The translations under genes and the position numbers were made by a program. A stretch of 63,929 bases of DNA, the filler included, from Polymyxa betae A26-41 (taxonomy: Eukaryota; Protista; Endomyxa: Phytomyxea): NCBI GenBank assembly GCA_003693705.1. It is 10 parts of 10 records of this genome, joined end to end, with 100 filler letters (N's around TTAATTAATTAA, not from the genome) between each part and the next. Parts side by side here need not be neighbours in the genome. Positions count along the whole stretch, not along the records: positions 23,204 to 37,149 come from RBZT01000427.1; 9 more parts are not named here. One strand, written 5' to 3'. Below the pieces are notes generated by a model. It was not told the origin of the DNA. It worked only from the letters and a program-made list of their open reading frames with translations, and searched no databases. Shown here in pieces: positions 4,000 to 37,676 of this stretch. Each line of letters opens with the position of its first letter. The stretch's first letter is position 1.

Positions 4000-4099
4000 N
4001 NNNNNNNNNNNNNNNNNNNNNNNNNNNNNNNNNNNNNNNNNNNTTAATTAATTAANNNNNNNNNNNNNNNNNNNNNNNNNNNNNNNNNNNNNNNNNNNN
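4000..4099. other. Artificial contig spacer N44-TTAATTAATTAA-N44 (also 8479-8578, 18988-19087, 23104-23203, 37150-37249, 45734-45833, 51791-51890, 57669-57768, 61568-61667)
   Basis: Nine identical 100-nt spacers, each with a six-frame stop linker. Confidence 0.98.
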
Positions 4100-5617
4100 T
4101 TTTTCAATTTTGACTATCAATGTTTAAATATTCTCGTACAACCAAGGACCTAGTCGACCAGACAAATTGCAGATAAAGGATCTAATAATACTACCTAAAT
4201 CATTAAAACAATTTGGGAAAATGATGATTGTAATGTATTAGCAAAGAGATTCTTGGAACAATCTCGATTGGCACGTCGCAAACGTAGGACCAGATGGAGG
4301 GTACACTCCTTTTGAATGGAGTAAGAGGCGATAGTATGGTCCCATTCTGATCGTTTACCGGCAGTTATGAGGTGCCGCTGTTCAACAGGAATGCCTTCAG
4401 CATCTTCACGGATTGCAGGAGTTCCGTAACAAGAGCATTGAGCGGAACATCGATTTCACGCGTTTTGCCGGTGTGATAAACCAGGCCGAAAACACTGTGG
4501 AACGATAATGCATCAAATTGTTTATGAGGAGAAATTTTGAGAGAAAATCGGTGATGACTGATGATGGGCGGAATTGAGTCATTGATGTGGAGAGTCACGA
4601 CAGCCGGTCAGCGCCTTTAAAAGAAGCTTCATAAGACCTCACGACTTCAATTGGAGATGAGAATCCGGTCTGGGCCACCAGATCGGAAGAGTTTTGGAAC
4701 CTTCCGTAGGATACGGATACATGGCCCGATATCGGGCGGACTTCTCGGATTCACTCAGATACGGGTTATACTCTAACTCGATCTCATCCGAAATTTTCAT
4801 CCGGAATCGGTTGAAGTTCAGCTGAGTTCGCCTTGGGGATCGGAATTGGACAAGAAGCCGGCTGCTATCCTGTTCTCATCCCTTTTCACACCAATTCAGT
4901 CAGGCGATTTTCATAGAATGTAACGTTTACGCTTGGGATCTCTAGTAGCAGATCGGGTGGTTTTTTGCGGGTGATGTTTTAAATGATTTCATTCCGGTAA
5001 TGAAGAACCGTACAGAGGCGGGCTCGCATATATCGGCATGGGTTTTCGCCAACTCTTCACTATCCGTGATGCTCTTTTCTTGCGGATCATCCAGCAAATC
5101 TGTGATTTCGAGTAAATATCTCTGAATCTTCCAACATAAATGTGTCGCAGTCCCAAATCACATAAGAACACATTAAAGAAATCAGCAAATGTGCAATGGT
5201 CGGGTCTATTTTGCTTACAGAATCTTCACAGAAATTCGACATTGTAGATTGAGATAGTCCCATGCCCTATCATGGCGTCTCCTTCATCATCAGATAGGAA
5301 AATCCATGTAGGCGACCTAGCTGAGAGCCGCCCAGGAGCCGGTGTTCCACTAAGGCTCCGATCGGATTCTGGATTAAGGTCGGGTACCAATTGGATCAAA
5401 GTAGTGAACGGTACCCGACCTCGAACATCCAGAGCTCTGTGCAATCGAATCAACTGGAAAAAATTTAACAAAAATACATCTGAAGCTACCGGCTGACCGA
5501 TTTTGATTGAGATGCTTTTAAAATAACTGTCCTTGGATCATTCCTCCCTGAGTTCCGCTCATACTGATAGGAGTTTTTGCTGATTCTCTATACAGTATAT
5601 TTTTTTACATGATTATT

Positions 5618-23011: not shown

Positions 23012-23203
23012 TAAAACAATATAGGATCCCTCTTCTCTTCGAGCGCTCTCCTTGCCTCTCTCCCTGTGTCACTCTATCTTCCTCACTATCTCTCTATGGT
23101 TGCNNNNNNNNNNNNNNNNNNNNNNNNNNNNNNNNNNNNNNNNNNNNTTAATTAATTAANNNNNNNNNNNNNNNNNNNNNNNNNNNNNNNNNNNNNNNNN
23201 NNN

Positions 23204-25220
23204 AGTTGGAGGTGAACTCTCCTCCGCTGTCGGTTTGGATCACGCTGACCTTATTGCCGGTGAAGGTTTCGTACTGACGGATGCATTTGAGAAGGAGTTC
23301 TGCCGCTTCGGATTTACGTTTCATGAAGAGCACGGTGACGAAGCGAGAGTGCTCGTCAATTATGGGCATGCAGTATTGATTACCTTGGATGCTGAGCTCA
23401 GGGTAGGAGCATAGATCGGTGTGTAATACTCTCCCTGGCTTCGAACTGCGGTGATCTTCATCTCGCGTTGGGAAGGCTAGTCGACACAGTTTTCCAGTTT
23501 CGCAGGCCTCGCACTTCCTATTGGGACCATGCTCTATTCCGATTGCGAGTTTCTTCGTCTCCATCTCGTGCAGGGTGCGTTCAGGAATGTGGGCGAGCCT
23601 TTTGTGCCAAAGCTCCGTTTGAGAAGCCGCATGAACCCATTGCTCAACAGAATTGTGGTCGAGCTCGTACAGTCCATTGTTCTTCTTGGCGGTCGCGATT
23701 AACCTGCCGGCCTTATACAACCGGCACCCGGTCTTGTCGAAGGTTGCGCTGTCTAAATCCCCGTCATCACAAGCTTTCCCTATAGACAGTAAGTTTCGGC
23801 TCGCTGATGGTACACATAACACGTCGCTGATCGTGAAACCGATGTTCGCAGATCCGTGTCCGNNNNNNNNNNNNNNNNNNNNNNNNNNNNNNNNNNNNNN
23901 NNNNNNNNNNNNNNNNNNNNNNNNNNNNNNNNNNNNNNNNNNNNNNNNNNNNNNNNNNNNNNNNNNNNNNNNNNNNNNNNNNNNNNNNNNNNNNNNNNNN
24001 NNNNNNNNNNNNNNNNNNNNNNNNNNNNNNNTTCTTGTCACAAATGTTGCAGACATTATCCTTCGCTAGACACTCGGCGAATGTGTGTCCGTCGCGTTTA
24101 CAGTGCCTGCATGACTTCTTCAACGTGGCCGTGTTCGCGTACTCAGGGTGTTTGGTCGATGGGTTATTTTTGGCGTAGCTGATTAGGGTCTGTTCCAGAG
24201 AAGCCCATGTCTGACGTTCGATTGGTCCGTATAGGATGGTGTCCTTGATCACGTTCATCTTCGGTGGTAGTTTGCGAATGATCGTCTGGAAGAGTTTTTG
24301 GTCGCTGATGGGTGCACCAGCGCTCGTCAGTGTTCTACATATTAAACGCACTGAGTTCAGGAAAACGAGTGTGTCGTCTTTGTCTGAGAGGCTGAGATTG
24401 TTCAGTTCGGCTTCCGCGGCGAGAACGTCGGCGGCGGCCTTTCCTTCGAAGTGTTGCTCCAACTTGTGCCATGTTGATGGAAGATCGATGCAGTTGATCG
24501 TGAGCATTTTGTAGTTCTCAGAAAGGGACATGATCAACATGTGGTACGCCAGGTCGTGGCGCCTGTCCCAGTCTGCTACATCTTCAGGTCCTTTCTGTGT
24601 AGATAGTGTCAGCTGTTGTTCCTCGAGAGCGTTGGAGTAGTCATTCGTTGCGTCTTCAAGTTCAGCTTGGGCTGCGTTCAGGGCTGCCGAAGCTTTCTCG
24701 TCATTTGGGGCTGCCTTGAGTTTCATTTTGGCTGTTACGAAGTTGATAGTTTTCTCCGAAAGCCGAAGCTGCGCGCTGTGCAGCTCCTTTGACTCAGATT
24801 GTAAATCGAGTGCTTGAGAGGGTCTGGGTTCGTCGCCCTTCATGATAGCGTAAGCGTTCACGCGTCTCATACCGATGATCACCTCTCGTTGCCACAGTTG
24901 CCAGTTAGAGTCGGATAAAACGTAGTAGTGAGTTACATACTTGATACCCGTGTTTCAGCCATCTGCTGTGTTGCTGGGCCCATAACCTGATATTGGAGGT
25001 AGCTATCTAGCGATAAACGCAGTGAACAGAGATATTTCCTTTTTATAATATATTATCTGTATCTACAGGCACGAGTTCGTTTGGTCATGGCACGCGCCAG
25101 CCATATTGATTTTATGCCATCAATGGTAACTTGATTGGGCGGGTACGCTGGCTGGACCCATGCGCAGCCCGCACCTCTGGGTCAGAAAGACTGCGTGGCG
25201 CAGCCACCGCAATCATAACA
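23204..25220 (-). mobile_element. Ty1/copia element 5' half: LTR (24988-25220), PBS, gag, GAG-pre-integrase, integrase
   Basis: LTR TGTTATG...AATATCA followed by GGTTATGGGCCCAGC (internal tRNA-iMet PBS); gag with CRHCKRDGHTFAEC; LWHKRLAH...CEAC; LHTDLC, IIDEHSRF, QTDSGGEF. Reading frames open. Confidence 0.95.
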
Positions 25221-25877
25221 TCACCATCATAATCCAACAGGTGCTCGAGCCCATGTATCATATCCATTCAAGTCTCCTCTTCTGGTGATCCAGCCAGCTT
25301 ATCAACTAATAATTCGATTAATATAATAACATCCGTGATTGTCTGCTGCAGTAAGAAAGTTCGCCAAAAATCTCGCTTGTTTTTAGGGTGCTGTATTAAA
25401 GTCGCGATTCTTTGAAATTTTGCACTTTATGAGTTAACTCTCAATGATTTCGGTTGGTCGATTACCATTCGACATGTATCTTCTAATTCCATACAAATGT
25501 TCTTAAGAAGCAACGACCTCAGGAGCGCTCAAGCACTTTCATAATATCTGGATTGGAGGAGTGCTCTGCATAACTTGATCAAAAGCTGCGCTAGGGTTCC
25601 GCAGCTCTTGATCAAAGAGATTTAACAGTTCCCATACCTTTTGTATCTATCCCCAATGAAAAAAATGAGCTCAAAATGCCTGAACTAGTCAATTAGAAGA
25701 CTTTTGTTGAGTAATTTAGAAAGGTTGCGAAATTTGCGTTCTAGAGAATGAATTTGTATTAATCAAATGGTCTGAAATTGATATCTCGGTCTACAGATTT
25801 CCTGCAGATAGAGCAGGACATTGTCCAGTTCATAGAATATCTCAATAGACAATGAATACGGCCTCCTCTATCCAAAA

Positions 25878-28203
25878 CTAATTGTGATTTGAGCGAATAT
25901 TTCCTCTTGTCACGGGTAATGAGTGTCTCATATCCAGATTGTTTACTCTTGCCTTTGTACCTAGAACAGCGCGTTTCAAATGCGCAAACGGATTTCCCCA
26001 GCGAGATTGCCAAGTCCGAAGATCATTCTGACAGCATATCTGCAAACAGACCAATACCGGGAGATAGGTTCTCCGAAGCCAATGATTACATCCTTCACGT
26101 TTTAGGCTTAATTTGGGATCGGTGACCTTGGCCCGAACTATTTTTAGACATAAACTGGCCACTAATATCAACTTCTGTAACGTGGTCTCCGAAGAAGATA
26201 TTTCCATTGTTTCAGTTAATATGAGCTGATCATTGAGAACTTTGATAATAATAGGGGCTTTTAAAGCTAGATTTTTGCAGATTGATGAGGCCGAAATGTT
26301 TGTATCAGTAATAAACGCGTACTCATCATCATCAGGCAGCTTCTTCTGTAATACAGATTGAGTGTGAATTCCGCATTGAATAAGAATTAAGCTCACCAGA
26401 AAATAACACAGAGTAGTGTAGTCTGTGATGCTCTCGACATTGAAATCAAAAAAGTCCAGATAGTTAAACACATCGCAAAGAGCTGGTAGAGCGGGACCCG
26501 TTGGTGGCGAACTAAATTTGTTCCCTTTTACGGACAGATTTTGGTCACTCTGTAGAGCATGACTGTCAATAAAGATGAAATAGTTATCTCGGATCAGATT
26601 CATAGACTGATGGGCTGTTAACAGTTTGGAGCGACATTCATCTCCAGAACATTTCTTATGGAGTTTCCAATGATTGAAGGGATTCCCCCAGACGGTTTGA
26701 AACATCCGGAGATCTTTCTCATAGCATTGAATGACACATCGTAGTACAGGACGACACACCTTATACAGCCAATGCCGTATTTGAGAATCAAGTTTTCTCC
26801 AAGTCCATTCATATTTCCGAGAGGCCATAATCAATTTCCGATACAAATTCGCTATCAGAATCAGCTTTTGTAATGTGGTCTGAGCAGAGCGGATTCGTGG
26901 GATTTCGCTGAAATCCAGATCATGTCCTTCCACATTGATAATAAATTGAGAGTTGATCATTGAGAATTGAACTGCATCACCATCGGACTTTGAAGACAGA
27001 AAACGAAGTTCTTCATCATTGGGCTCTTTGATCTAATTTCCATTCAATATACTGCATGATTGAAAGGCTCCTGAAACATCACCAGAAACTTGCAGAGACT
27101 TTTATAATCAGTGATCTCGTCATCGAAGGAACATGAAAAGTCGGTTGGCGATGACGTCTCGTCAACACGAGGACGTTTTCGGGAGAGATTTGCGACTGGT
27201 TCATCATTCTGGTTATGAAGAGATTCAGGACATGAGACTGGACAAGGACACATTACGTTGAAAGTTTCTAGAATAGGAAGAAAAACCGGAACAGTTTCTG
27301 TATGGGGTAGAACAGATGTTAATGTTGGTAGAGTTCCAATATCAGGCACCGTGTCGAATATTTCAAGAAAGTAATCGTCAGTGGAGATCTGAAATTATAA
27401 ATCAGTATCACAGTTATATAATCATTTCATACAAGAAAATTTCCATCCAGATCGAATGAGGAATCGAAGAGGTTGTTGGAATAAGGAAGATCAGAGAAAT
27501 TTTGGATTGAATCATAGAAAATCGGTTCCTAGAATGCATGAGAAAGGTGCCTTCTTTCTGACAGAGCGATCTTACCCCGGGCTCTGTAACATGGAGGTCG
27601 AGTGGAGTGACAGTAACATGAGTCTCTTCAGATGAGTTGGTGGCCTGACGATGCCCATCAACCTGAATATTCTTAACGGTTTCTAAGATATCAGACTAAT
27701 TAAGGAAGCTTTACATTGATAGTTTTTTTGAATAGGAGGTAAACCCGGAACATTATCTGTATGATGTAATAAAGATGTTGATGTTGGTAAAGTTCCAATA
27801 TCAGATCGAGTGCCCAACATTTCACGAATTTCATCCCCAGTAGACATCTGAATAAAAATCAATATCAAAATACAACAAATATATTGTATAATCATTTCAT
27901 ACATTAAAATATAAATCCAGATCAAATGAAGGATCTAAGAGGTTGTTGAAATTCGGATGATCAGAGAAATTTTGAATTGGATATGAATCATAGACAATCG
28001 GTTCCTAATAATGATTGTTAAAGAGAGGCGTCTTCTTTCTGACAGAGCGATCTTACGCCGATGTCTGTAACGTTGAGGTCGAGAGGAGATACAGTAACAT
28101 GAGACTCTTCCAGATAGTCTGTAACATTACCAGGCCCAGAACTGAATGCAGCCAAGCACTCAGATAATCTCAGTATGAGGAAGACAAACGCTGGTCCAAC
28201 CAT
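25878..28203 (-). CDS. Multi-exon candidate secreted protein built from duplicated modules, with NLS-like motif
   Basis: MVGPAFVFLILRLSECLAAFSS signal-peptide-like start; duplicated exon-intron unit (27250-27640 vs 27720-28120); duplicated C-terminal domain (ITDY..LC.FL, TTLQKLIL, WGNPF.H); RKRPR; one extra A in a homopolymer near 27725. Confidence 0.65.
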
Positions 28204-29115: not shown

Positions 29116-31064
29116 ATGTGGGAATTTCGAAGCTCAACAAAAGCTCTTCGAAGCGACGGTCGCGTTTATTACCGTCCAGAAGAAATGTCTAGAAAACCCT
29201 AAAGACGATATGTTAGCCAAAACGTTCCAAAACGCACAAGCGGACCTTGAACGGACGAGCGACCACTATACATTCTTCTAACGACCAATTCCCCATCCAA
29301 AACTTCGATTTCCGACGCATCAGCGGAGAGAGACACTGCAGACTGGGATCGACGACATGACAGTGACTCTGTTTGCTTCTTCAATGGTATTTCGTTAGTT
29401 TTGACAACGGATTCTGATTTGAATTGAATAATTTTATTGAGGATTTCTGCGTGGCGAAACGAGGCCGCAAATTGCTGAGTGCGCGGCTTTATGCGGAAAA
29501 CAGAACGCCACAGCTGTCCGATCTTCATCGACTTTAGCTTCAAAATGGGGAAAACTGTGATGTTCGGGTGGTCTTCAACTGCTTTGACGATCTGTTTAAT
29601 TTCCCTAGAGCTCCTTCAATTTTCAGTAATTTCGCTGATGAAATCGCATCTTTTACCAGGTTTCAGCCTGTGAACATCACTTTATCCGTGGTCGGATATC
29701 CGTCGCTCTTATACCTAGCTATAGAGAATTTTACGTAAGTGGAAACTAGGCTGCGCTAGAGACAACAAGAACGATTGCTAGGTCTCGCCAATGTGGTCCG
29801 GACTCCGTTTCTGATCCGTTCTCATCCAAAGCTGGCCTCAAGCTGAACTTTTTGCATTCCAGGATGAATGAGTCTGAGAGCGTTCTCGGCGGAGTTTTTA
29901 CAGAGCTCATGCAATTCCTCTTCGTGCTTGGCTAGTAGAGCGAATCTGTCAAATGCCATTTCATTGTCATTCGAACAATGATTCGATTTATCGGCTTTAA
30001 AACTGCTCCCAGTGGTGAAATTTCGGCAGCTGTGCAATTGTGGGAATCCTCTTGATCGCTGACAACTTTTCGCTTGCTCCCCATGTCTTCAGATTGTTCT
30101 TCATTACAACTGCCCGTTACATTATATTGATCGTGTTAATGGGCTGGCTCGTTATCGTATTTTAAATCATCGACCATGACTTTGCAGATGGCATTACAGG
30201 AAGAGACCCTTCGTTATCATTGCCACGATAAGCGGCAGCTGCAAGCGATACAGCGGACTCGCACCGGTTGTTGGTGGAAAACAGAGTCCAAGGCCACATG
30301 CCCACGTTGTCAAAAGAAGACTGTTGTCCCAATAGAGGGCGCAGCCCAATTCCGGTAACTCCGTCCGCCGGATGCGCGTTTCATTCCATTTAGGATATCA
30401 TCTCCATTTTCTCTGGCTAAAATCTGCTCGAGATCATTCTAGCTAGTGTGTAGTGCTGTTAAAGTAGGCCTTGGACTAACGGCTGTGGAGCTGTTATTGT
30501 ACCTTATTGTCAGTTTGTTTGCGGTGAAGTCCAGGTGCAGTTACTACAAACAAGGAAACGTGCTTTCACAGTTAATCTTTTCAACACGGTTATCGGGTGC
30601 TTAATTCTAGGGATTCCATTTTTGATGCAAGCTTTCATTAATAAAAGCTGTGTTATAATTACTCTCATTTCGAGGCTGATACTGAGGTAATTAATGGCTG
30701 TCTGACGATTGAATCCAGAGTCTTACTATTCTTCTTTAACATTTTGTTGATGGTCAGTTGTTTTTTGGTGATATGGTTGCTCGGTGATGTTGAACTGATT
30801 CGTTTCCGATCTATCTGTCCTTCCGTCGGCATTTCTTATAATCGATTCTTGTTGCATAACCTCTATCTGACATGATTCGGAATATTTTTTTTGAGTTTTG
30901 GGAAACCTGTGTTGGTAGAGAGGGGATAAAGTGCTGGGACGGTTGTGACTTGTATCGACCCGAGACGCTGAATGTGGTTGCGTAGTGCTGTCCAAGTGTT
31001 GAGCATAGAGTCAGTAACGTGTATATGAGCAAGGGCTGCGCGTATTTCGGTTTCGTATCGTAAG

Positions 31065-32519
31065 TGTAAAGAACCTGCTGCTTGAGTGACTCCGTCAAGG
31101 GGCCGAATCGTTGGCCGAAGTTCGTGTTCGCATGCGCGACCCACGGAAAACAGTCCGTGTTTCAAACCAGGAACAAATAAAACGTTATCGATCGTGATAC
31201 TGCCGTTAACTCCGCGCAATCTAATAGATCCGGCCACTGTTGATGTAATCGCCCTTCCGTCAGCCATAATCACATTCGTTGGTTCGATTCGAACGAGGTC
31301 GTACAGCGTGCCGCGGTCCCCGGTCATGTGCGATGTAGCCCCGGAGTCACAAATCATATAATCAATTGAGATCATCATCATTTAGCGTAGATGCTGAATA
31401 TCCGGTCTCCTCAGTCATGTTCGCTTCCTGTTTGCTGTTCTTGTTGTTTGTTTTGCCCTTCTCTTGATTGTTACCATCCTTGTTATCATTCTTCTTCGTT
31501 CGTTCGGGCTTGCGGCAATTTCGTGAGAGATGACCAATACTGTTACAGTTGTAGCATTTTCTGTTTTTGTTTTCTGGGTTGCGTTGCGGAGAATCCAGGT
31601 TCCCGGCGTTCCGACCCTCCGCGCTCTATTTCTTGTTCTCGTAATAGAAGCGCTGCACTTAATTCATCAAAAGACGGCAGCAGAGTGCGGCCAGCAGTCA
31701 GAGCTGCAATCGTGTGTTCATATCGTTTGTCCTTGACGCTTATCAAAATCGCAGATGATAATTCGGCGTCGTGGATATCTCATCCAGCCAGTCGTAGCCG
31801 AAGAGCGAGCTCCTTCATCTCCATTAGATGTTTCCGCATTCCATGTTTCGAATTCAAAGCCTTGTTTACAACGTCTTGTTTCATGTACTGAACTTGAGAA
31901 AAGGTCTTGGCTCTGCGTGCATTTTCTAGTGCGCTCCATGCTGCATGCAGCTGGTGTACGGCATTCGATCACAATCATGACTTGACTTGGCTCAAGGTTG
32001 TTCACAATTTCGGCAAAACATGCGTCGTGATCATTTACATTCGTTCAGACTCCAAAATGTTCCAAAATCGAATGGACTTCAAGCGGACTTTCATCTAAAA
32101 CGCCCACATTATGTAGTTCTCGTCGTTGAGTTTGACTCTTTTGTATGATTTCGTCGAATAGCCGCTCGGTTGTGCCGTCGTTTCAGGTGTCGCAACAATG
32201 TCTGGGCCATAACCTGTAAAGGACCTGCTGCTTGAGTGACTCCGTCAAGGGCAAAATCGTTGGCCGAAGTTCGTGCGTAACGTGCGGAAGCCGTTCGTTG
32301 TGTCAGAGCAGTTCGTCGTGTTGTGGTCATCGTATTGACCTTCGTAAAAGAGGAATCGTAACTAGTATCGGTATCAAGGAATGAGCAGTATATTTCCGGT
32401 TGTACACGTGAATCATAAAATTGACTCACGCGGATGCTGGCGCTTCCTTAACCGAAAGGCTGTTTAATTTATCTATGATCGAGGTCGAGATTTGTAGCTG
32501 TTAACAGAGGACTACAACA
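31065..32519 (-). mobile_element. Internally deleted Ty1/copia element: 5' LTR, PBS, gag, protease joined to terminal 62 bp of 3' LTR
   Basis: PBS GGTTATGGCCCAG at 32202-32214; protease MICDSGATSHM and DNVLFVPGLKHGLFSVG; 31065-31126 matches LTR end 32215-32275. Outer LTR boundary uncertain. Confidence 0.85.
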
Positions 32520-34202: not shown

Positions 34203-35523
34203 ATGAATATTGCTATTGTGATCACTGCTCTCCTGTTCGTGACGGTCTCTGCCACCAAGAGCGACCCCGAATCCAGCCATGGTCGCGTCCCTGCCAGCGA
34301 GGTCAACATCGAGACGAGTTCCAGCCTCGGTGCTGCAGTCATCGATGCACCCACCGTACTGGCCCCGTCCCGCCGGTCGCCTGACTTGCCCGAACGTCAT
34401 CTCGAGCTTGAGCTCATTATTAAGAACGCAGAGTTCGGCCTGAATTTGTTTTCGGCGTTCGCCCATCTCAGCAAAACAAGCTACGAGCTTGTCCGTGGCC
34501 GGGCTCGCGATGTGTGGCGGAAAGCGGTCGTCGGATGGCGACTTCCCTGAGACATGGAGGCAGCTGTTTTCGCGTTCGGCCTCCATTTTCTCCGACATTT
34601 TCACCGACGAAACAGCCGCCTTTTTCTTAAGCCGGCTCCAGGTGTCAGCGCGTCATTCACCGGACGCCGTGCTGGATCTGTTCACGAAGAGCGGAATCGG
34701 ACGGATCCCATCTGTTGGCAGATTGATTCCCGGTTGGATCGCATCCATCGAATTAGTGAATTATTTCTCCGCTCGAGGAGCAGTTCTCACCAACCGATCT
34801 GGTGAAATATTGAAGTTAATTCCTGAGGAATGTGGCTCAATATCCACGGACAATATTCCTGTTGATGTTCTCGCAATACTCCAGCAAGATGACGACTATG
34901 ATTACGACCAATTCGGCACCATGCCAGGATCTCTCAAAAAACGCCATTGGACGGTAATCAGGGTTTCCAAGATTGTTGCAGCACAATATATTCGATCCCT
35001 CCCAGATCTCCCCCGAACTCTGTACTTTCTCGGGTTCCCTCTTTATCTGCCGTTTGTGAGTCTCTCACGTCTCACGACCTCCGACCTGCAGCGTATTTTG
35101 CCTTTTGTTCTATATTCGGACCTTGCGCTGGCAGACAAGATTAAAGTCTTAATCCAACGAGGACGTTCCGATGTGATCTCCGCCATCATTCAGTGCGAGA
35201 ACTTCCGATTCGGGTCCAGTAAATCAATTTACAGAATCATGCTGCACCTGATCGTCATCGAGAGACATCACGGCTTCTTACGCGCTCTGCTGCAGACGAA
35301 GTTCAGGGACGGCCTGCTCCATAAAGTCGCATCTAGAACATCTCCTATTCCGATTCTGCATCATGCCGTACAGGTCCGTAATGCCGCCGCCGTTCGTGAG
35401 CTGCTCTTAATTGAGGGTCTGTTCGATTTGAATCTTCTCGACAATAAGAACCGCACTGCCCGTTCTTATGCTGAAGAAGGCTCGGAGATCGCTATGTTAT
35501 TGGATGGTCCGAGCTCTGTGTAA
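34203..35523 (+). CDS. Candidate secreted protein: signal peptide, F-box-like motif, C-terminal ankyrin repeat; one frameshift near 34530
   Basis: MNIAIVITALLFVTVSA; DLPERHLELELII...FAHLSKTSYELV; PILHHAVQVRNAAAVRELL...DLNLLDNKNRTARSYA. Overlapping ORFs 34158-34550 and 34489-35523. Confidence 0.7.
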
Positions 35524-35622
35524 TATCTTGATGAATGTTGTGATGCTTGATAAATTGGCTCTTTTCCGATAAACTCCTCCTTGTTGTAAATCCGACTTCT
35601 GAGACTGTGCTGTGTTACTATG

Positions 35623-36790
35623 TGTTAGAACTAGGGGTTCTACTTGGTAACGTAACAGCGTCGGGGAAGCGTCAAGATAGCCCTACTGCCATGAGAGCAT
35701 GCGTTAGATGGGGCCTAACATCATGTCTGATTTTGTATTAGGGCTATCTTGACGCTTCCCCGACGCTGTTACGTTACCAAGTAGAACCCCAAGTTCTAAC
35801 AGGTTATGGGCCCAGCTCAAGGGGGCCGGGCGGCTCGGGTTTGGTGCTGCCGGTGCGGTCAAGTTGAGATCTCCTTTGGGGATAACTTCGGTGATGGAGA
35901 TGCTCGTGAAAGCGAACTGTCAAGATGATGATCGTCAAGGATGAATGGAATGAACTCACGGAGAAGTTACGCCGCGAACAGAGGGCTCCGCTGAGGTCGC
36001 AAGGACTCGGTTGGAGTATGCATCGTTCGGGCGGGAGCTGAAGAAGCCGCGTCGGATAAGACAGAAGAGGCCATGGTAAAAGGGCTACGCGAGGAACAGG
36101 CAGCGTCCCAGGAGGCCGCAGGGAAGCGGCGGGAGCAACGTTCGAGCGGGAGCTGAGGAGGCCGCGATGCTTAGGAAGTCCGCGCGCTAAGGGATTTACG
36201 GAGAAGATAAGTCGGACTGAAACCGGGGAAGGCGCTGCTGCGGACAGGAGGTCCGCGGGTCGCAGGCAATGAAGCTGGTGTCGACTTACGCCGTAACGTA
36301 AAAGAAATCGTGATGTTCGAGTGAGGAGAAGATGAGGACGGTCTAACGACGGAAAAGGGGCAAGAATTTGAAGAAGATGAAGATGGGAATGCGATGAGGT
36401 GCGGGATGGACCAGGCAAGTCATAAGGTGGGAGACTGCAGAGCCTATAACTCCAAGGGTCGGAGTCCGTCGGAAACGGAGGCGCAGTTACTGTATTGTTA
36501 CACAGTCGTTGTCCAAAGTTTGATTGCTGGTGCCGGAGCTGCTGAAACCTGAAGTCGCAGAGGCGTGCCGTTTTGTACGATCGCCGATTCGTCTGGGCGG
36601 GAGTGTTGGAGTTGTCAGACTCCGTGTGATCACGTGCTATCGATCGTACGGTACTAATGGGGCATGCGACCCTAATAAACAATCAGACATGATGTTAGGC
36701 CCCATCTAACGCATGCTCTCATGGCAGTAGGGCTATCTTGACGCTTCCCCGACGCTGTTACGTTACCAAGTAGAGCCCCAAGTTCTAACA
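35623..36790 (+). mobile_element. Small non-autonomous copia-type LTR element (TRIM-like) with palindromic rearranged 5' LTR
   Basis: TSD CTATG at 35618-35622 and 36791-36795; TG...CA ends; PBS GGTTATGGGCCCAGC 35802-35816; PPT GGGCGGGAG before 3' LTR 36604-36790; 5' LTR 35623-35801 has 63-bp inverted arms. Confidence 0.92.
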
Positions 36791-36795
36791 CTATG

Positions 36796-36817
36796 AAACC
36801 CTAAAACCTAACCCCCA
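36796..36817. repeat. Degenerate telomere-like repeat
   Basis: AAACCCTAAAACCTAACCCC immediately after the TSD. Confidence 0.45.
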
Positions 36818-37676
36818 TGACAAGCTTGGGATTTTTAGCCCCACTCGTCGTTATTTAAAAGTATAGAGGTCACCCCTCTCGACTCATCTTCCAGTACGGC
36901 TCCTGTTAAGAACGTCCTTGGATTACGGCATCATCATTGAGTCGGTATGACCAATACACTGTGCGTTACTGTCCATCACATTTTAGAAAGCAGTGCGGAG
37001 GCCCTTTGGAGAGCTGTTCCTTCTGTCTTTGAGCGACTGATGACAGATTCGGAGCCGCCGGCCAACCTGTGCTTAGTTCTCTATCTCTATCAGGATGGAT
37101 ATTCGCCCTTTGGTTGTGTCCGGTGTTGTTGGATTAGCTCAATCCACATNNNNNNNNNNNNNNNNNNNNNNNNNNNNNNNNNNNNNNNNNNNNTTAATTA
37201 ATTAANNNNNNNNNNNNNNNNNNNNNNNNNNNNNNNNNNNNNNNNNNNNTTTCGGAGAGAGCTCAGGAGATCGATTGAGCGAAGGATTGGGCTCATTCGA
37301 TCCGGAAGCTTTGATGGACGTCAACGGCTTCGGAGGCCGCTCCTCGCCATTCATAGTAGGGAGACGAGGGGACCCGCGCAGTCCATGACAGTTAGGGCTC
37401 TTCCCCTATAGGAATCGTCAGAAGGGGCGCAGCCCTCTGCGCAGCCCCTCAGGAAGGGCCAGTACGACTGTCTGGTGGTCGGCTGGGCGGCTGCGAGTAC
37501 TGTCATGCTCAATGGGCATGACACTGCCATCATGACAAATTTTCTTCAGCGTCGACGAAACGACATGACGGCTGGTATCGACGCAAACATAAATGAAGGT
37601 GGCGGTTGGCAAGGTGATTTTTGATTTATTATACCTCTAAAGCAATAAAAGCTTTGCCTTTTCCATGAATTCTGAT

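What the first reader, a model, noticed from the sequence alone, without database searches (positions are those of the whole stretch)
35618..36795. Integrated LTR element with U5 at both ends: palindromic 5' LTR
Seen: the 3' LTR (36604-36790) is normal, with a PPT and AATAAA. The 5' LTR (35623-35801) is instead the reverse complement of the last ~120 nt of that LTR, joined through a shared TAGGG (35739-35743) to the last 63 nt in normal orientation. This makes a hairpin with 63-bp arms, and U3 is absent. Perfect CTATG TSDs and TG...CA ends indicate that integrase inserted the molecule as a unit. Inference: during final strand-displacement synthesis the nascent minus strand switched at the CCCTA/TAGGG microhomology onto its own displaced 5' end, giving a cDNA with two U5 att sites. 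If the structure is multi-copy it would be an unusual inverted-LTR TRIM family and a hairpin/siRNA source.
Basis: partly seen in the sequence, partly recalled or inferred. Interest (0 to 1): 0.8.

Follow-up and report, generated by a model that had tools for sequence, protein, structure and literature searches.

The report
Copia-type retroelement with fold-back 5' end
A small non-coding copia-type LTR retrotransposon was inserted with a hairpin of inverted R-U5 sequence in place of its left LTR; this looks like the trace of one reverse-transcription accident and not a new kind of element.

Summary
Bases 35623-35743 are the reverse complement of the last 121 nt of the 187-nt 3' LTR (36604-36790). 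They join through a shared TAGGG (35739-35743) to a direct copy of the last 63 nt (35739-35801). This gives a hairpin with 63-bp arms and a 53-nt loop. U3 is absent on the left, the ends are TG...CA, and CTATG flanks both sides.

New evidence shows it is a real LTR retrotransposon of the Ty1/copia kind:
- The 15 nt after the left U5 copy (35802-35816) exactly complement the anticodon stem-loop of initiator tRNA-Met, the copia/Ty5 "half-tRNA" primer site.
- The same 15-mer follows the LTR of a coding Copia element 10 kb away.
- Contigs from public runs show the LTR is multicopy (about 15-25x) and ends at AACA with other flanks.
- U3, R and U5 are about equally deep, so normal LTRs predominate.
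- A paralogue of the flank lacks the insertion, with its break exactly at 35622.

Best reading: one aberrant cDNA with U5 at both ends was integrated in a single event. [quoted passage not shown] A propagating inverted-LTR family is not supported. No independent read confirmed the palindromic junction.

The parts
35618..35622 (+). Left copy of the 5-bp target-site duplication, CTATG
   Evidence: A contig from a paralogous flank copy aligns up to 35622 and then skips the element in runs X1, X2 and X3.
35623..35743 (-). Inverted R-U5: reverse complement of LTR positions 67-187. It starts with TG, the reverse complement of the U5 terminal CA.
   Evidence: 121 nt, 96.7% identical to the reverse complement of 36670-36790.
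35623..35685 (.). Left arm of the hairpin
   Evidence: pair I2, 63 nt, 98%; fold.
35686..35738 (-). Hairpin loop, 53 nt: reverse complement of LTR positions 72-124. It includes the inverted poly(A) signal, here changed to AATACA.
35739..35743 (.). TAGGG microhomology shared by the inverted and direct parts; this is the join
   Evidence: TAGGG and CCCTA each occur only once in the LTR.
35739..35801 (+). Direct copy of the last 63 nt of the LTR (U5, positions 125-187), forming the right arm of the hairpin
   Evidence: (family D1, 98%).
35802..35816 (+). Primer binding site GGTTATGGGCCCAGC, complementary to the anticodon stem-loop of initiator tRNA-Met
   Evidence: an exact 15-mer inside the antisense tRNAiMet oligonucleotides printed in PMC1797187 and PMC5648532; the same 15-mer follows the LTR of the Copia element at 24973-24987 on the minus strand.
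35817..36594 (+). Purine-rich internal region with no coding capacity. It contains a degenerate 115-nt-spaced duplication and two extra PPT-like motifs (36023-36037 and 36138-36152).
   Evidence: longest plus-strand ORF 61 aa; no Pfam hit; no similarity to the neighbouring Copia gag; families D2 and D3.
36595..36603 (+). Polypurine tract GGGCGGGAG (one C), abutting the 3' LTR
36604..36790 (+). Complete 187-nt 3' LTR, TGTTGGA...TCTAACA. AATAAA lies at 36674-36679. Inferred layout: U3 about 1-66, R from about 67.
   Evidence: word depth rises about 5-fold in the bin that holds 36604, and a contig of run X9 loses similarity upstream of 36600.
36791..36795 (+). Right copy of the target-site duplication, CTATG
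   Evidence: The junction is spanned without mismatch by an X1 contig covering 36745-36950.

Best explanation
[quoted passage not shown] It was integrated once, as a single aberrant cDNA carrying a U5 end at both termini. This core claim I hold at about 0.8.

The most likely route is inferred, not shown, and I hold it at about 0.45:
1. Minus-strand strong-stop DNA (the reverse complement of R-U5, LTR positions about 67-187) failed to transfer to the 3' R.
2. Its 3' end ...TAGGG folded back onto the only CCCTA within itself.
3. Reverse transcriptase extended that end to the 5' end of the strand and on into the primer RNA. This made a hairpin that ends in a plus-sense PBS.
4. After primer removal, the hairpin acted as a substitute plus-strand strong-stop DNA. 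Its PBS annealed to a full-length minus strand made from the co-packaged RNA.
5. Extension of both strands gave a blunt duplex: inverted R-U5, direct U5, PBS, internal region, PPT, normal LTR.
6. Integrase joined the two CA-3' U5 ends to the target and made the CTATG duplication.

The copy has no U3 promoter on the left and is dead on arrival. The hairpin has no demonstrated function.
For: Shown:
- The repeat geometry and the 5-nt join.
- The inverted part ends exactly at the U5 terminus next to the duplication. This is expected if synthesis ran off the 5' end of a minus-strand DNA, and is hard to obtain by DNA-level rearrangement.
- An exact 15-nt primer site for the tRNAiMet anticodon stem-loop directly follows the direct U5 copy. 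The same site occurs in a coding Copia element nearby.
- The LTR is multicopy, and other copies end at AACA with other flanks (loose ends at 35800, 35801 and 36767).
- U3, R and U5 bins have similar depth in X2, about 4200, 4050 and 4540 against about 189 for single-copy contigs.
- A paralogue of the flank breaks at 35622.

Consistent with the self-priming route:
- The candidate strong-stop DNA folds with its last 23 nt unpaired.
- The left copy allows 5 bp, then one mismatch, then 3 more pairs at the fold-back point.
- Stronger 7-nt fold-back sites exist for ends at LTR positions 54 and 59 but were not used. This fits a template that ended near position 67.
- AATAAA begins 4 nt downstream of position 67, a plausible place inside a short R.
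Against: - No read or contig spanning the 35738/35739 junction was seen, so the palindrome rests on the assembly alone.
- The RNA 5' end of this family is unknown. An RNA starting with C at positions 67-69 would be somewhat unusual.
- 16 of about 183 possible stop positions offer a 5-nt fold-back, so the microhomology alone does not single out position 67.
- The four sequence differences between the copies do not separate the routes.
- Self-primed products are described as dead ends and were not detected in endogenous reactions (PMC6088434).
No tRNA gene lies in the piece.
Confidence: 0.45

Rival explanations
1. After the second strand transfer, the nascent minus strand copied U5 of the plus-strand strong-stop DNA down to position 125. 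It then switched at TAGGG/CCCTA onto the displaced 5' end of the minus strand and ran off at the U5 terminus.
For: It predicts the same minus-strand sequence, the same 5-nt microhomology and the same exact U5 terminus. Reverse transcriptases can switch templates on very short complementarity (PMC4668388).
Against: By inference from the standard reverse-transcription scheme, the plus strand would still begin with U3-R. It would not match the new minus-strand tail. The tail would also occupy the template that the plus strand needs to finish the right LTR. A duplex left end would need further unexplained steps.
Confidence: 0.2
2. Two separate cDNA molecules each gave one U5 end to a single concerted integration. 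The free inner ends were then resected and joined by microhomology-mediated end joining at TAGGG.
For: It explains two U5 ends, one 5-bp duplication and a 5-nt microhomology join. To my knowledge, integration of two U5 ends is efficient in vitro.
Against: It requires loss of all but 121 nt of one cDNA and 124 nt of the other. It needs more independent events than a single aberrant cDNA. It gives no reason for the inner breakpoint to lie next to the poly(A) signal.
Confidence: 0.1
3. An assembly or sequencing artefact created the palindrome; the real locus has a normal left LTR.
For: No contig spanning the junction was listed. The region is repeat-rich. In run X1 the only contig over 35879-35897 differs from the window at 5 positions.
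Against: - The join shares only 5 nt, too few for a graph or overlap collapse.
- The inverted part abuts the target duplication exactly at the U5 terminus.
- The arms carry their own private mismatch, and the loop carries two differences from the 3' LTR.
- The 3' junction and flank are reproduced in independent runs.
Confidence: 0.07
4. It is a DNA-level structure: a transposon with terminal inverted repeats, a DIRS-like element with inverted repeats plus an internal complementary region, or a rearrangement after integration.
For: 121-nt terminal inverted repeats with a 5-bp duplication look like a TIR element. Inverted ends plus an adjacent complementary piece recall DIRS.
Against: - An exact tRNAiMet primer site follows U5, and a PPT precedes a TG-initiated LTR.
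- Similarity in another genome stops at the LTR start (run X9).
- To my knowledge DIRS elements make no target duplication, whereas one is present here.
- A replication fold-back would have no reason to stop exactly at the U5 terminus.
- A deletion between two opposed elements would need identical duplications by chance (1 in 1024). It also conflicts with the contiguous paralogous flank.
Confidence: 0.04

Closest known systems
Drosophila copia and yeast Ty5 (Ty1/copia elements primed by an internal part of initiator tRNA-Met)
   Same: The primer site is complementary to the anticodon stem-loop of tRNAiMet and sits directly after the LTR. The LTR has TGTTGGA...ACA termini and a 5-bp duplication. 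PMC5371799 names the copia half-tRNA primer and cites the Ty5 paper. The copia and Ty5 details are from my own knowledge.
   Different: There is no gag or pol. The internal 0.8 kb is non-coding, and the left LTR is replaced by a fold-back.
TRIM and other small non-autonomous LTR retrotransposons
   Same: The LTR is short (187 nt), the internal region carries a PBS and a PPT, there is no coding capacity, and the family is multicopy (definition in PMC6934838).
   Different: The element is 1168 bp (the canonical form would be 1176 bp), above the 1000-bp limit. This copy lacks a direct left LTR.
Self-priming of HIV-1 minus-strand strong-stop DNA (TAR-dependent, suppressed by nucleocapsid)
   Same: The 3' end of the R-U5 minus DNA folds back and is extended on itself into a hairpin (PMC6088434, PMC4668388).
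   Different: The HIV-1 product is an in vitro dead end driven by a stable hairpin. Here the fold-back rests on 5 bp, and the product appears to have been completed and integrated in a genome.
5' inversion of L1 insertions by twin priming (own knowledge; 5'-inverted L1 copies are mentioned in PMC2912911)
   Same: A single retrotransposition event leaves an inverted 5' segment joined by microhomology, inside one target duplication.
   Different: Twin priming depends on target-primed reverse transcription at a chromosomal nick. Here the ends are integrase-type U5 ends of a cytoplasmic cDNA.
DIRS retroelements
   Same: They have inverted terminal repeats plus an adjacent piece complementary to an end.
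   Different: To my knowledge DIRS elements use a tyrosine recombinase and make no target duplication. Here a 5-bp duplication, a PBS, a PPT and a normal 3' LTR are present.

Membership tests
LTR retrotransposon, Ty1/copia kind with half-tRNA priming | Primer binding site complementary to a tRNA, directly after the 5' LTR | tested here: met
   35802-35816 matches 15 of 15 the antisense initiator tRNA-Met (anticodon stem-loop) printed in PMC1797187 and PMC5648532. The host's own tRNA was not available.
LTR retrotransposon, Ty1/copia kind with half-tRNA priming | Two direct LTRs | tested here: not met
   Only the last 63 nt of the LTR are repeated directly on the left. U3 and most of R are missing there. 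Depths suggest that other family copies have whole LTRs.
LTR retrotransposon, Ty1/copia kind with half-tRNA priming | TG...CA termini and a 4-6 bp target-site duplication | tested here: met
   TG at 35623, CA at 36790, CTATG on both sides.
LTR retrotransposon, Ty1/copia kind with half-tRNA priming | Polypurine tract abutting the 3' LTR | tested here: met
   GGGCGGGAG at 36595-36603. It is short and has one pyrimidine.
LTR retrotransposon, Ty1/copia kind with half-tRNA priming | gag and pol genes in copia order | tested here: not met
   No ORF above 61 aa on the plus strand and no Pfam hit. The element is therefore non-autonomous. A coding Copia with the same PBS lies at 23204-25239.
TRIM | Total length under 1000 bp with terminal repeats of 100-250 bp | tested here: not met
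   The LTR is 187 nt, but the element is 1168 bp. Definition from PMC6934838.
   U3, R and U5 word depths are about equal in X2, which argues for normal LTRs. The junction itself could not be counted. Metagenome scans found nothing.
Self-primed minus-strand strong-stop product | Outer end at the primer/U5 junction, and an inner join by base pairing of the 3' end with the strand itself | tested here: met
   The inverted part begins at the exact U5 terminus. The join is TAGGG on CCCTA, followed by three further pairs after one mismatch.
Self-primed minus-strand strong-stop product | The inner end of the inverted part coincides with the 5' end of the element's RNA | not testable with these tools
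   The single run search and the single read-laying run were used on DNA contigs. No RNA data were read.
DIRS | No target-site duplication; tyrosine recombinase | tested here: not met
   A 5-bp duplication is present and no coding capacity exists.
microRNA precursor (MIR408, MIR859) | Score at or above the Rfam gathering threshold | tested here: not met
   29.8 bits against 64, and 32 bits against 130. These are generic hairpin matches.

The most novel reading that the evidence does not exclude
This insertion is a natural in vivo record that self-primed minus-strand strong-stop DNA, regarded as a dead end, can be rescued as a surrogate plus-strand strong-stop and finished into an integration-competent cDNA with two U5 ends. 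Its inner breakpoint (36670) would then mark the RNA start of the family. A further untested possibility: the 63-bp hairpin lies 100 nt downstream of an ankyrin-like ORF on the same strand. If it is read through, it could make double-stranded RNA against the family's U5, in the manner of the maize Mu killer locus.
Probability: 0.35. Interest if true: 0.6.

Novelty: new variant of a known kind. Interest (0 to 1): 0.45.

Why it matters
Errors of reverse transcription are mostly known from test-tube reactions and from defective proviruses. A cleanly bounded genomic insertion lets the order of events be inferred: exact U5 termini, one target duplication and a 5-nt join. It shows that integrase accepts two U5 ends in vivo. 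It also suggests that a fold-back strong-stop product need not be a dead end. The reading makes a sharp, cheap prediction: the RNA 5' end of the family lies at LTR positions 67-69. Apart from that, this is one dead copy of an ordinary small copia-type family, with no shown effect on the host.

Tried and rejected
- Two exact-pattern scans of metagenome contigs found nothing: a U5 24-mer, and the LTR end plus PBS plus 8 nt. No further family copies could be fetched.
- The listed contigs in read laying did not span the palindromic junction or the 5' junction.
- Attempts to name the organism failed:
  - The 360-aa ORF is not on record.
  - Atlas searches gave only generic ankyrin and Copia-gag clusters.
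  - No tRNA gene lies in the piece.
- The internal region shows no gag remnant by tblastn against the neighbouring Copia gag or by Pfam.
- The 292-aa minus-strand ORF (35804-36682) has no Pfam hit, lies opposite a purine-rich strand, and is taken as spurious.
- A Tf1-type self-primer was considered and rejected by eye: the sequence at the inferred R start is not complementary to the PBS region, and an exact tRNAiMet site is present.
- Rfam miRNA hits lie far below threshold.
- Literature searches for inverted or palindromic LTR insertions found no precedent. This is a limited search and no proof of absence.
- One search call failed on a two-letter term, and one paper was not held.

Full report
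**Observation**

- 35622-35743 pairs with 36670-36791: 122 nt, 97% complementary.
- 35739-35801 repeats 36728-36790: 63 nt, one mismatch.
- 35623-35685 pairs with 35739-35801: 62 of 63, with a 53-nt loop.
- A script placed the differences at LTR positions 75, 77, 172 and 177.
- CTATG lies at 35618-35622 and 36791-36795, and the ends are TG and CA.
- TAGGG at 35739-35743 is shared by the inverted and direct parts.
- As single-stranded DNA the 179 nt fold at -81.8 kcal/mol, z = -22 against shuffles.
- A 40-mer of U5 occurs three times in the window against none expected.
- No similarity to U3 (36604-36669) exists at the left end.

**Why it is an LTR retrotransposon of the copia kind**
- The 3' LTR (36604-36790, 187 nt) begins TGTTGGA and ends TCTAACA.
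- It follows the purine run GGGCGGGAG (36595-36603) and holds AATAAA at 36674-36679.
- A sensitive self-comparison of the piece gave one unexpected short hit. The last 5 nt of U5 plus the next 15 nt (35797-35816) match 24973-24992 on the minus strand.
- That place is the LTR end and leader of a Copia element. Its gag (Retrotran_gag_2), pre-integrase and integrase core domains were found by Pfam.
- The shared 15-mer GGTTATGGGCCCAGC occurs exactly inside antisense initiator tRNA-Met oligonucleotides printed in two papers (PMC1797187, PMC5648532). It corresponds to the anticodon stem-loop.
- This is the internal, "half-tRNA" mode of priming known for Drosophila copia. PMC5371799 names it and cites the Ty5 paper.
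- The internal 0.8 kb has no ORF above 61 aa on the plus strand, no Pfam match and no similarity to the neighbouring gag.
- The element is therefore non-autonomous. At 1168 bp it is slightly above the TRIM size limit given in PMC6934838.

**Evidence from public runs**

One run search and one laying call were allowed. All four runs laid were contigs, so word depth is only a rough guide.
- In run X2, single-copy flank contigs have depth about 189.
- In X2 the LTR bins have about 4050-4740, and the internal region about 450-2400.
- In run X1 the figures are about 17 for flank against 200-340 for the LTR.
- The LTR is thus present at roughly 15-25 copies, and the internal region at a few.
- The bins for U3 (36623-36673, 4208), the middle of the LTR (4053) and the U5 end (35756-35806, 4539) are similar. 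A family built like this copy would show U3 much rarer than U5.
- Loose ends show other copies that end at AACA and run into different flanks (35800, 35801, 36767).
- A contig of run X9, from another organism label, loses similarity just upstream of the LTR start (36600).
- A frequent variant joins 35824 to 36113 and diverges after 36136, so other internal forms exist.
- The flank itself is repeated. One contig, 86% alike, covers 35450-35622 in X1, X2 and X3 and then skips to 36876. About 68 unaligned letters stand where the window has 80 nt of right flank. This is a paralogous site without the insertion, broken exactly at the left boundary.
- The 3' junction is spanned without mismatch in X1 (36745-36950). 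An X3 contig (36775-36950) reaches it with only 16 letters on the LTR side.
- No listed contig spans the 5' junction or the join at 35738/35739. Independent proof of the palindrome is lacking.

**Ruling out DNA-level origins**
- A deletion between two opposed elements would need two identical 5-bp duplications by chance. It would also conflict with the contiguous paralogous flank.
- An in-place inversion would put the wrong end next to the flank.
- A replication fold-back would not stop exactly at the U5 terminus.
- A TIR transposon or a DIRS-like element does not fit the tRNA primer site, the PPT, the normal 3' LTR and the target duplication.
- An assembly collapse cannot be built on a 5-nt overlap. 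The three U5 copies also carry private differences.

**Mechanism**

The exact stop at the U5 terminus means that a polymerase ran off the 5' end of a minus-strand DNA. Two routes give the observed sequence.

It gives the right minus strand. However, the PPT-primed plus strand keeps a U3-R head that does not match it. The new tail would also sit on the template that the plus strand needs.

The route I prefer starts earlier.
1. Minus-strand strong-stop DNA (the reverse complement of LTR positions about 67-187) does not transfer.
2. Its 3' end ...TAGGG pairs with the only CCCTA in the strand.
3. It is extended to the 5' end and into the primer RNA, which gives a plus-sense PBS.
4. This hairpin then serves in place of the plus-strand strong-stop DNA on a full-length minus strand from the second packaged RNA.
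5. All later steps are normal, and the product is a blunt duplex with CA-3' U5 ends on both sides.

Self-priming of strong-stop DNA is well documented in vitro. It is regarded there as a dead end (PMC6088434; PMC4668388).

Points that fit the self-priming route:
- The candidate strand folds with its last 23 nt free.
- The left copy allows 5 pairs, one mismatch, then 3 more pairs at the fold-back.
- Stronger 7-nt fold-back sites exist for ends at positions 54 and 59 but were not used. This is expected if the template RNA ended near position 67.
- AATAAA begins 4 nt downstream of position 67, a plausible position in a short R.
- Contigs diverge from this LTR upstream of position 98 (loose ends at 36701 and 35712). 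That fits recombinant LTRs exchanged in or near R (PMC6894440).

None of this proves the route. Sixteen of about 183 possible stop positions offer a 5-nt fold-back. The four base differences do not discriminate between routes. A third route also remains possible: two cDNAs each give a U5 end to one integration, and the inner ends are then joined by end joining.

**Consequences**
- The copy has no U3 on the left, so it cannot make a proper genomic RNA and should not propagate.
- The copies differ by 1.6-3.3%, so the insertion is not very recent.
- The hairpin lies 100 nt downstream of the stop of an ankyrin-like ORF on the same strand (34489-35523). Whether it is transcribed or yields small RNAs was not tested.
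- Rfam matches to plant miRNA precursors are far below threshold and reflect only hairpin shape.

**Limits**
- The organism could not be named, because run and organism names were coded.
- Literature searches found no earlier description of an LTR element inserted with an inverted R-U5 in place of its left LTR. This is a limited search and does not prove absence.

**Verdict**
- This is a structural variant of a known kind of element: one fossil of a reverse-transcription accident.
- It is of moderate interest, because it gives a testable prediction about the RNA start and about rescue of self-primed strong-stop DNA.

Noticed in passing
window 23204-25239, minus strand: A coding Copia element is cut by the piece edge. 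Its LTR runs from about 25239 to 24988 (TGTTGGA...TCA). The tRNAiMet half-tRNA PBS is at 24987-24973. gag (Retrotran_gag_2) lies at about 24882-24032, and the pre-integrase and integrase core domains below 23862. Its LTR is otherwise unrelated to the 187-nt LTR, so it shares the primer but is probably not the direct parent.
   Followed up: partly
window 23863-24031: A run of 169 N lies inside the Copia gag/pol region. ORFs listed across it (23148-24056 and 23767-24882) are joined artificially.
   Followed up: yes
window 30863-31381, minus strand: A 172-aa ORF has a strong Pol_BBD domain (E 5e-18). This is a second Copia pol fragment, so the piece is rich in transposons.
   Followed up: no
window 27265-28138: A unit of about 470 bp is duplicated in tandem. 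Its segments are 77-84% alike.
   Followed up: no
window 25878-26960, minus strand: A 360-aa ATG ORF has no Pfam hit and an internal duplication: the motifs TTLQKLIL and WGNPF each appear twice. It is not on record in the gene-position index.
   Followed up: partly
window 34489-35523 and flanks 35450-35622, 36876-36924: An ankyrin-like ORF ends 100 nt before the insertion. Its downstream sequence is a multicopy family in the runs, with many variant contigs about 86% alike. A motif of about 40 nt near 36883-36924 recurs at joints with several paralogues.
   Followed up: partly
window 36796-36816: Directly after the right CTATG lies a short, degenerate telomere-repeat-like stretch (units of the CCCTAAA / CCTAA type). 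Its meaning is unknown.
   Followed up: no
window 36023-36037, 36138-36152, 36589-36603: The PPT-containing 15-mer occurs three times in the element at 87% identity or better. Two of the copies lie within a degenerate internal duplication spaced 115 nt apart.
   Followed up: no
window 35824/36113 and 36136: In runs X1, X2 and X3 a very abundant variant joins 35824 to 36113 and then diverges after 36136 into unrelated sequence that contains an ATG. In X3 its depth is about 1865 against 2-5 for single-copy contigs. It may be the leader of the autonomous or main form of the family.
   Followed up: no
window 36657-36716 (LTR positions 54-113): Two 7-nt inverted matches (positions 54-60 with 96-102, and 59-65 with 107-113) could form a stem that encloses the AATAAA signal. 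The stem could form only at the 3' end of an RNA that starts near position 67.
   Followed up: no
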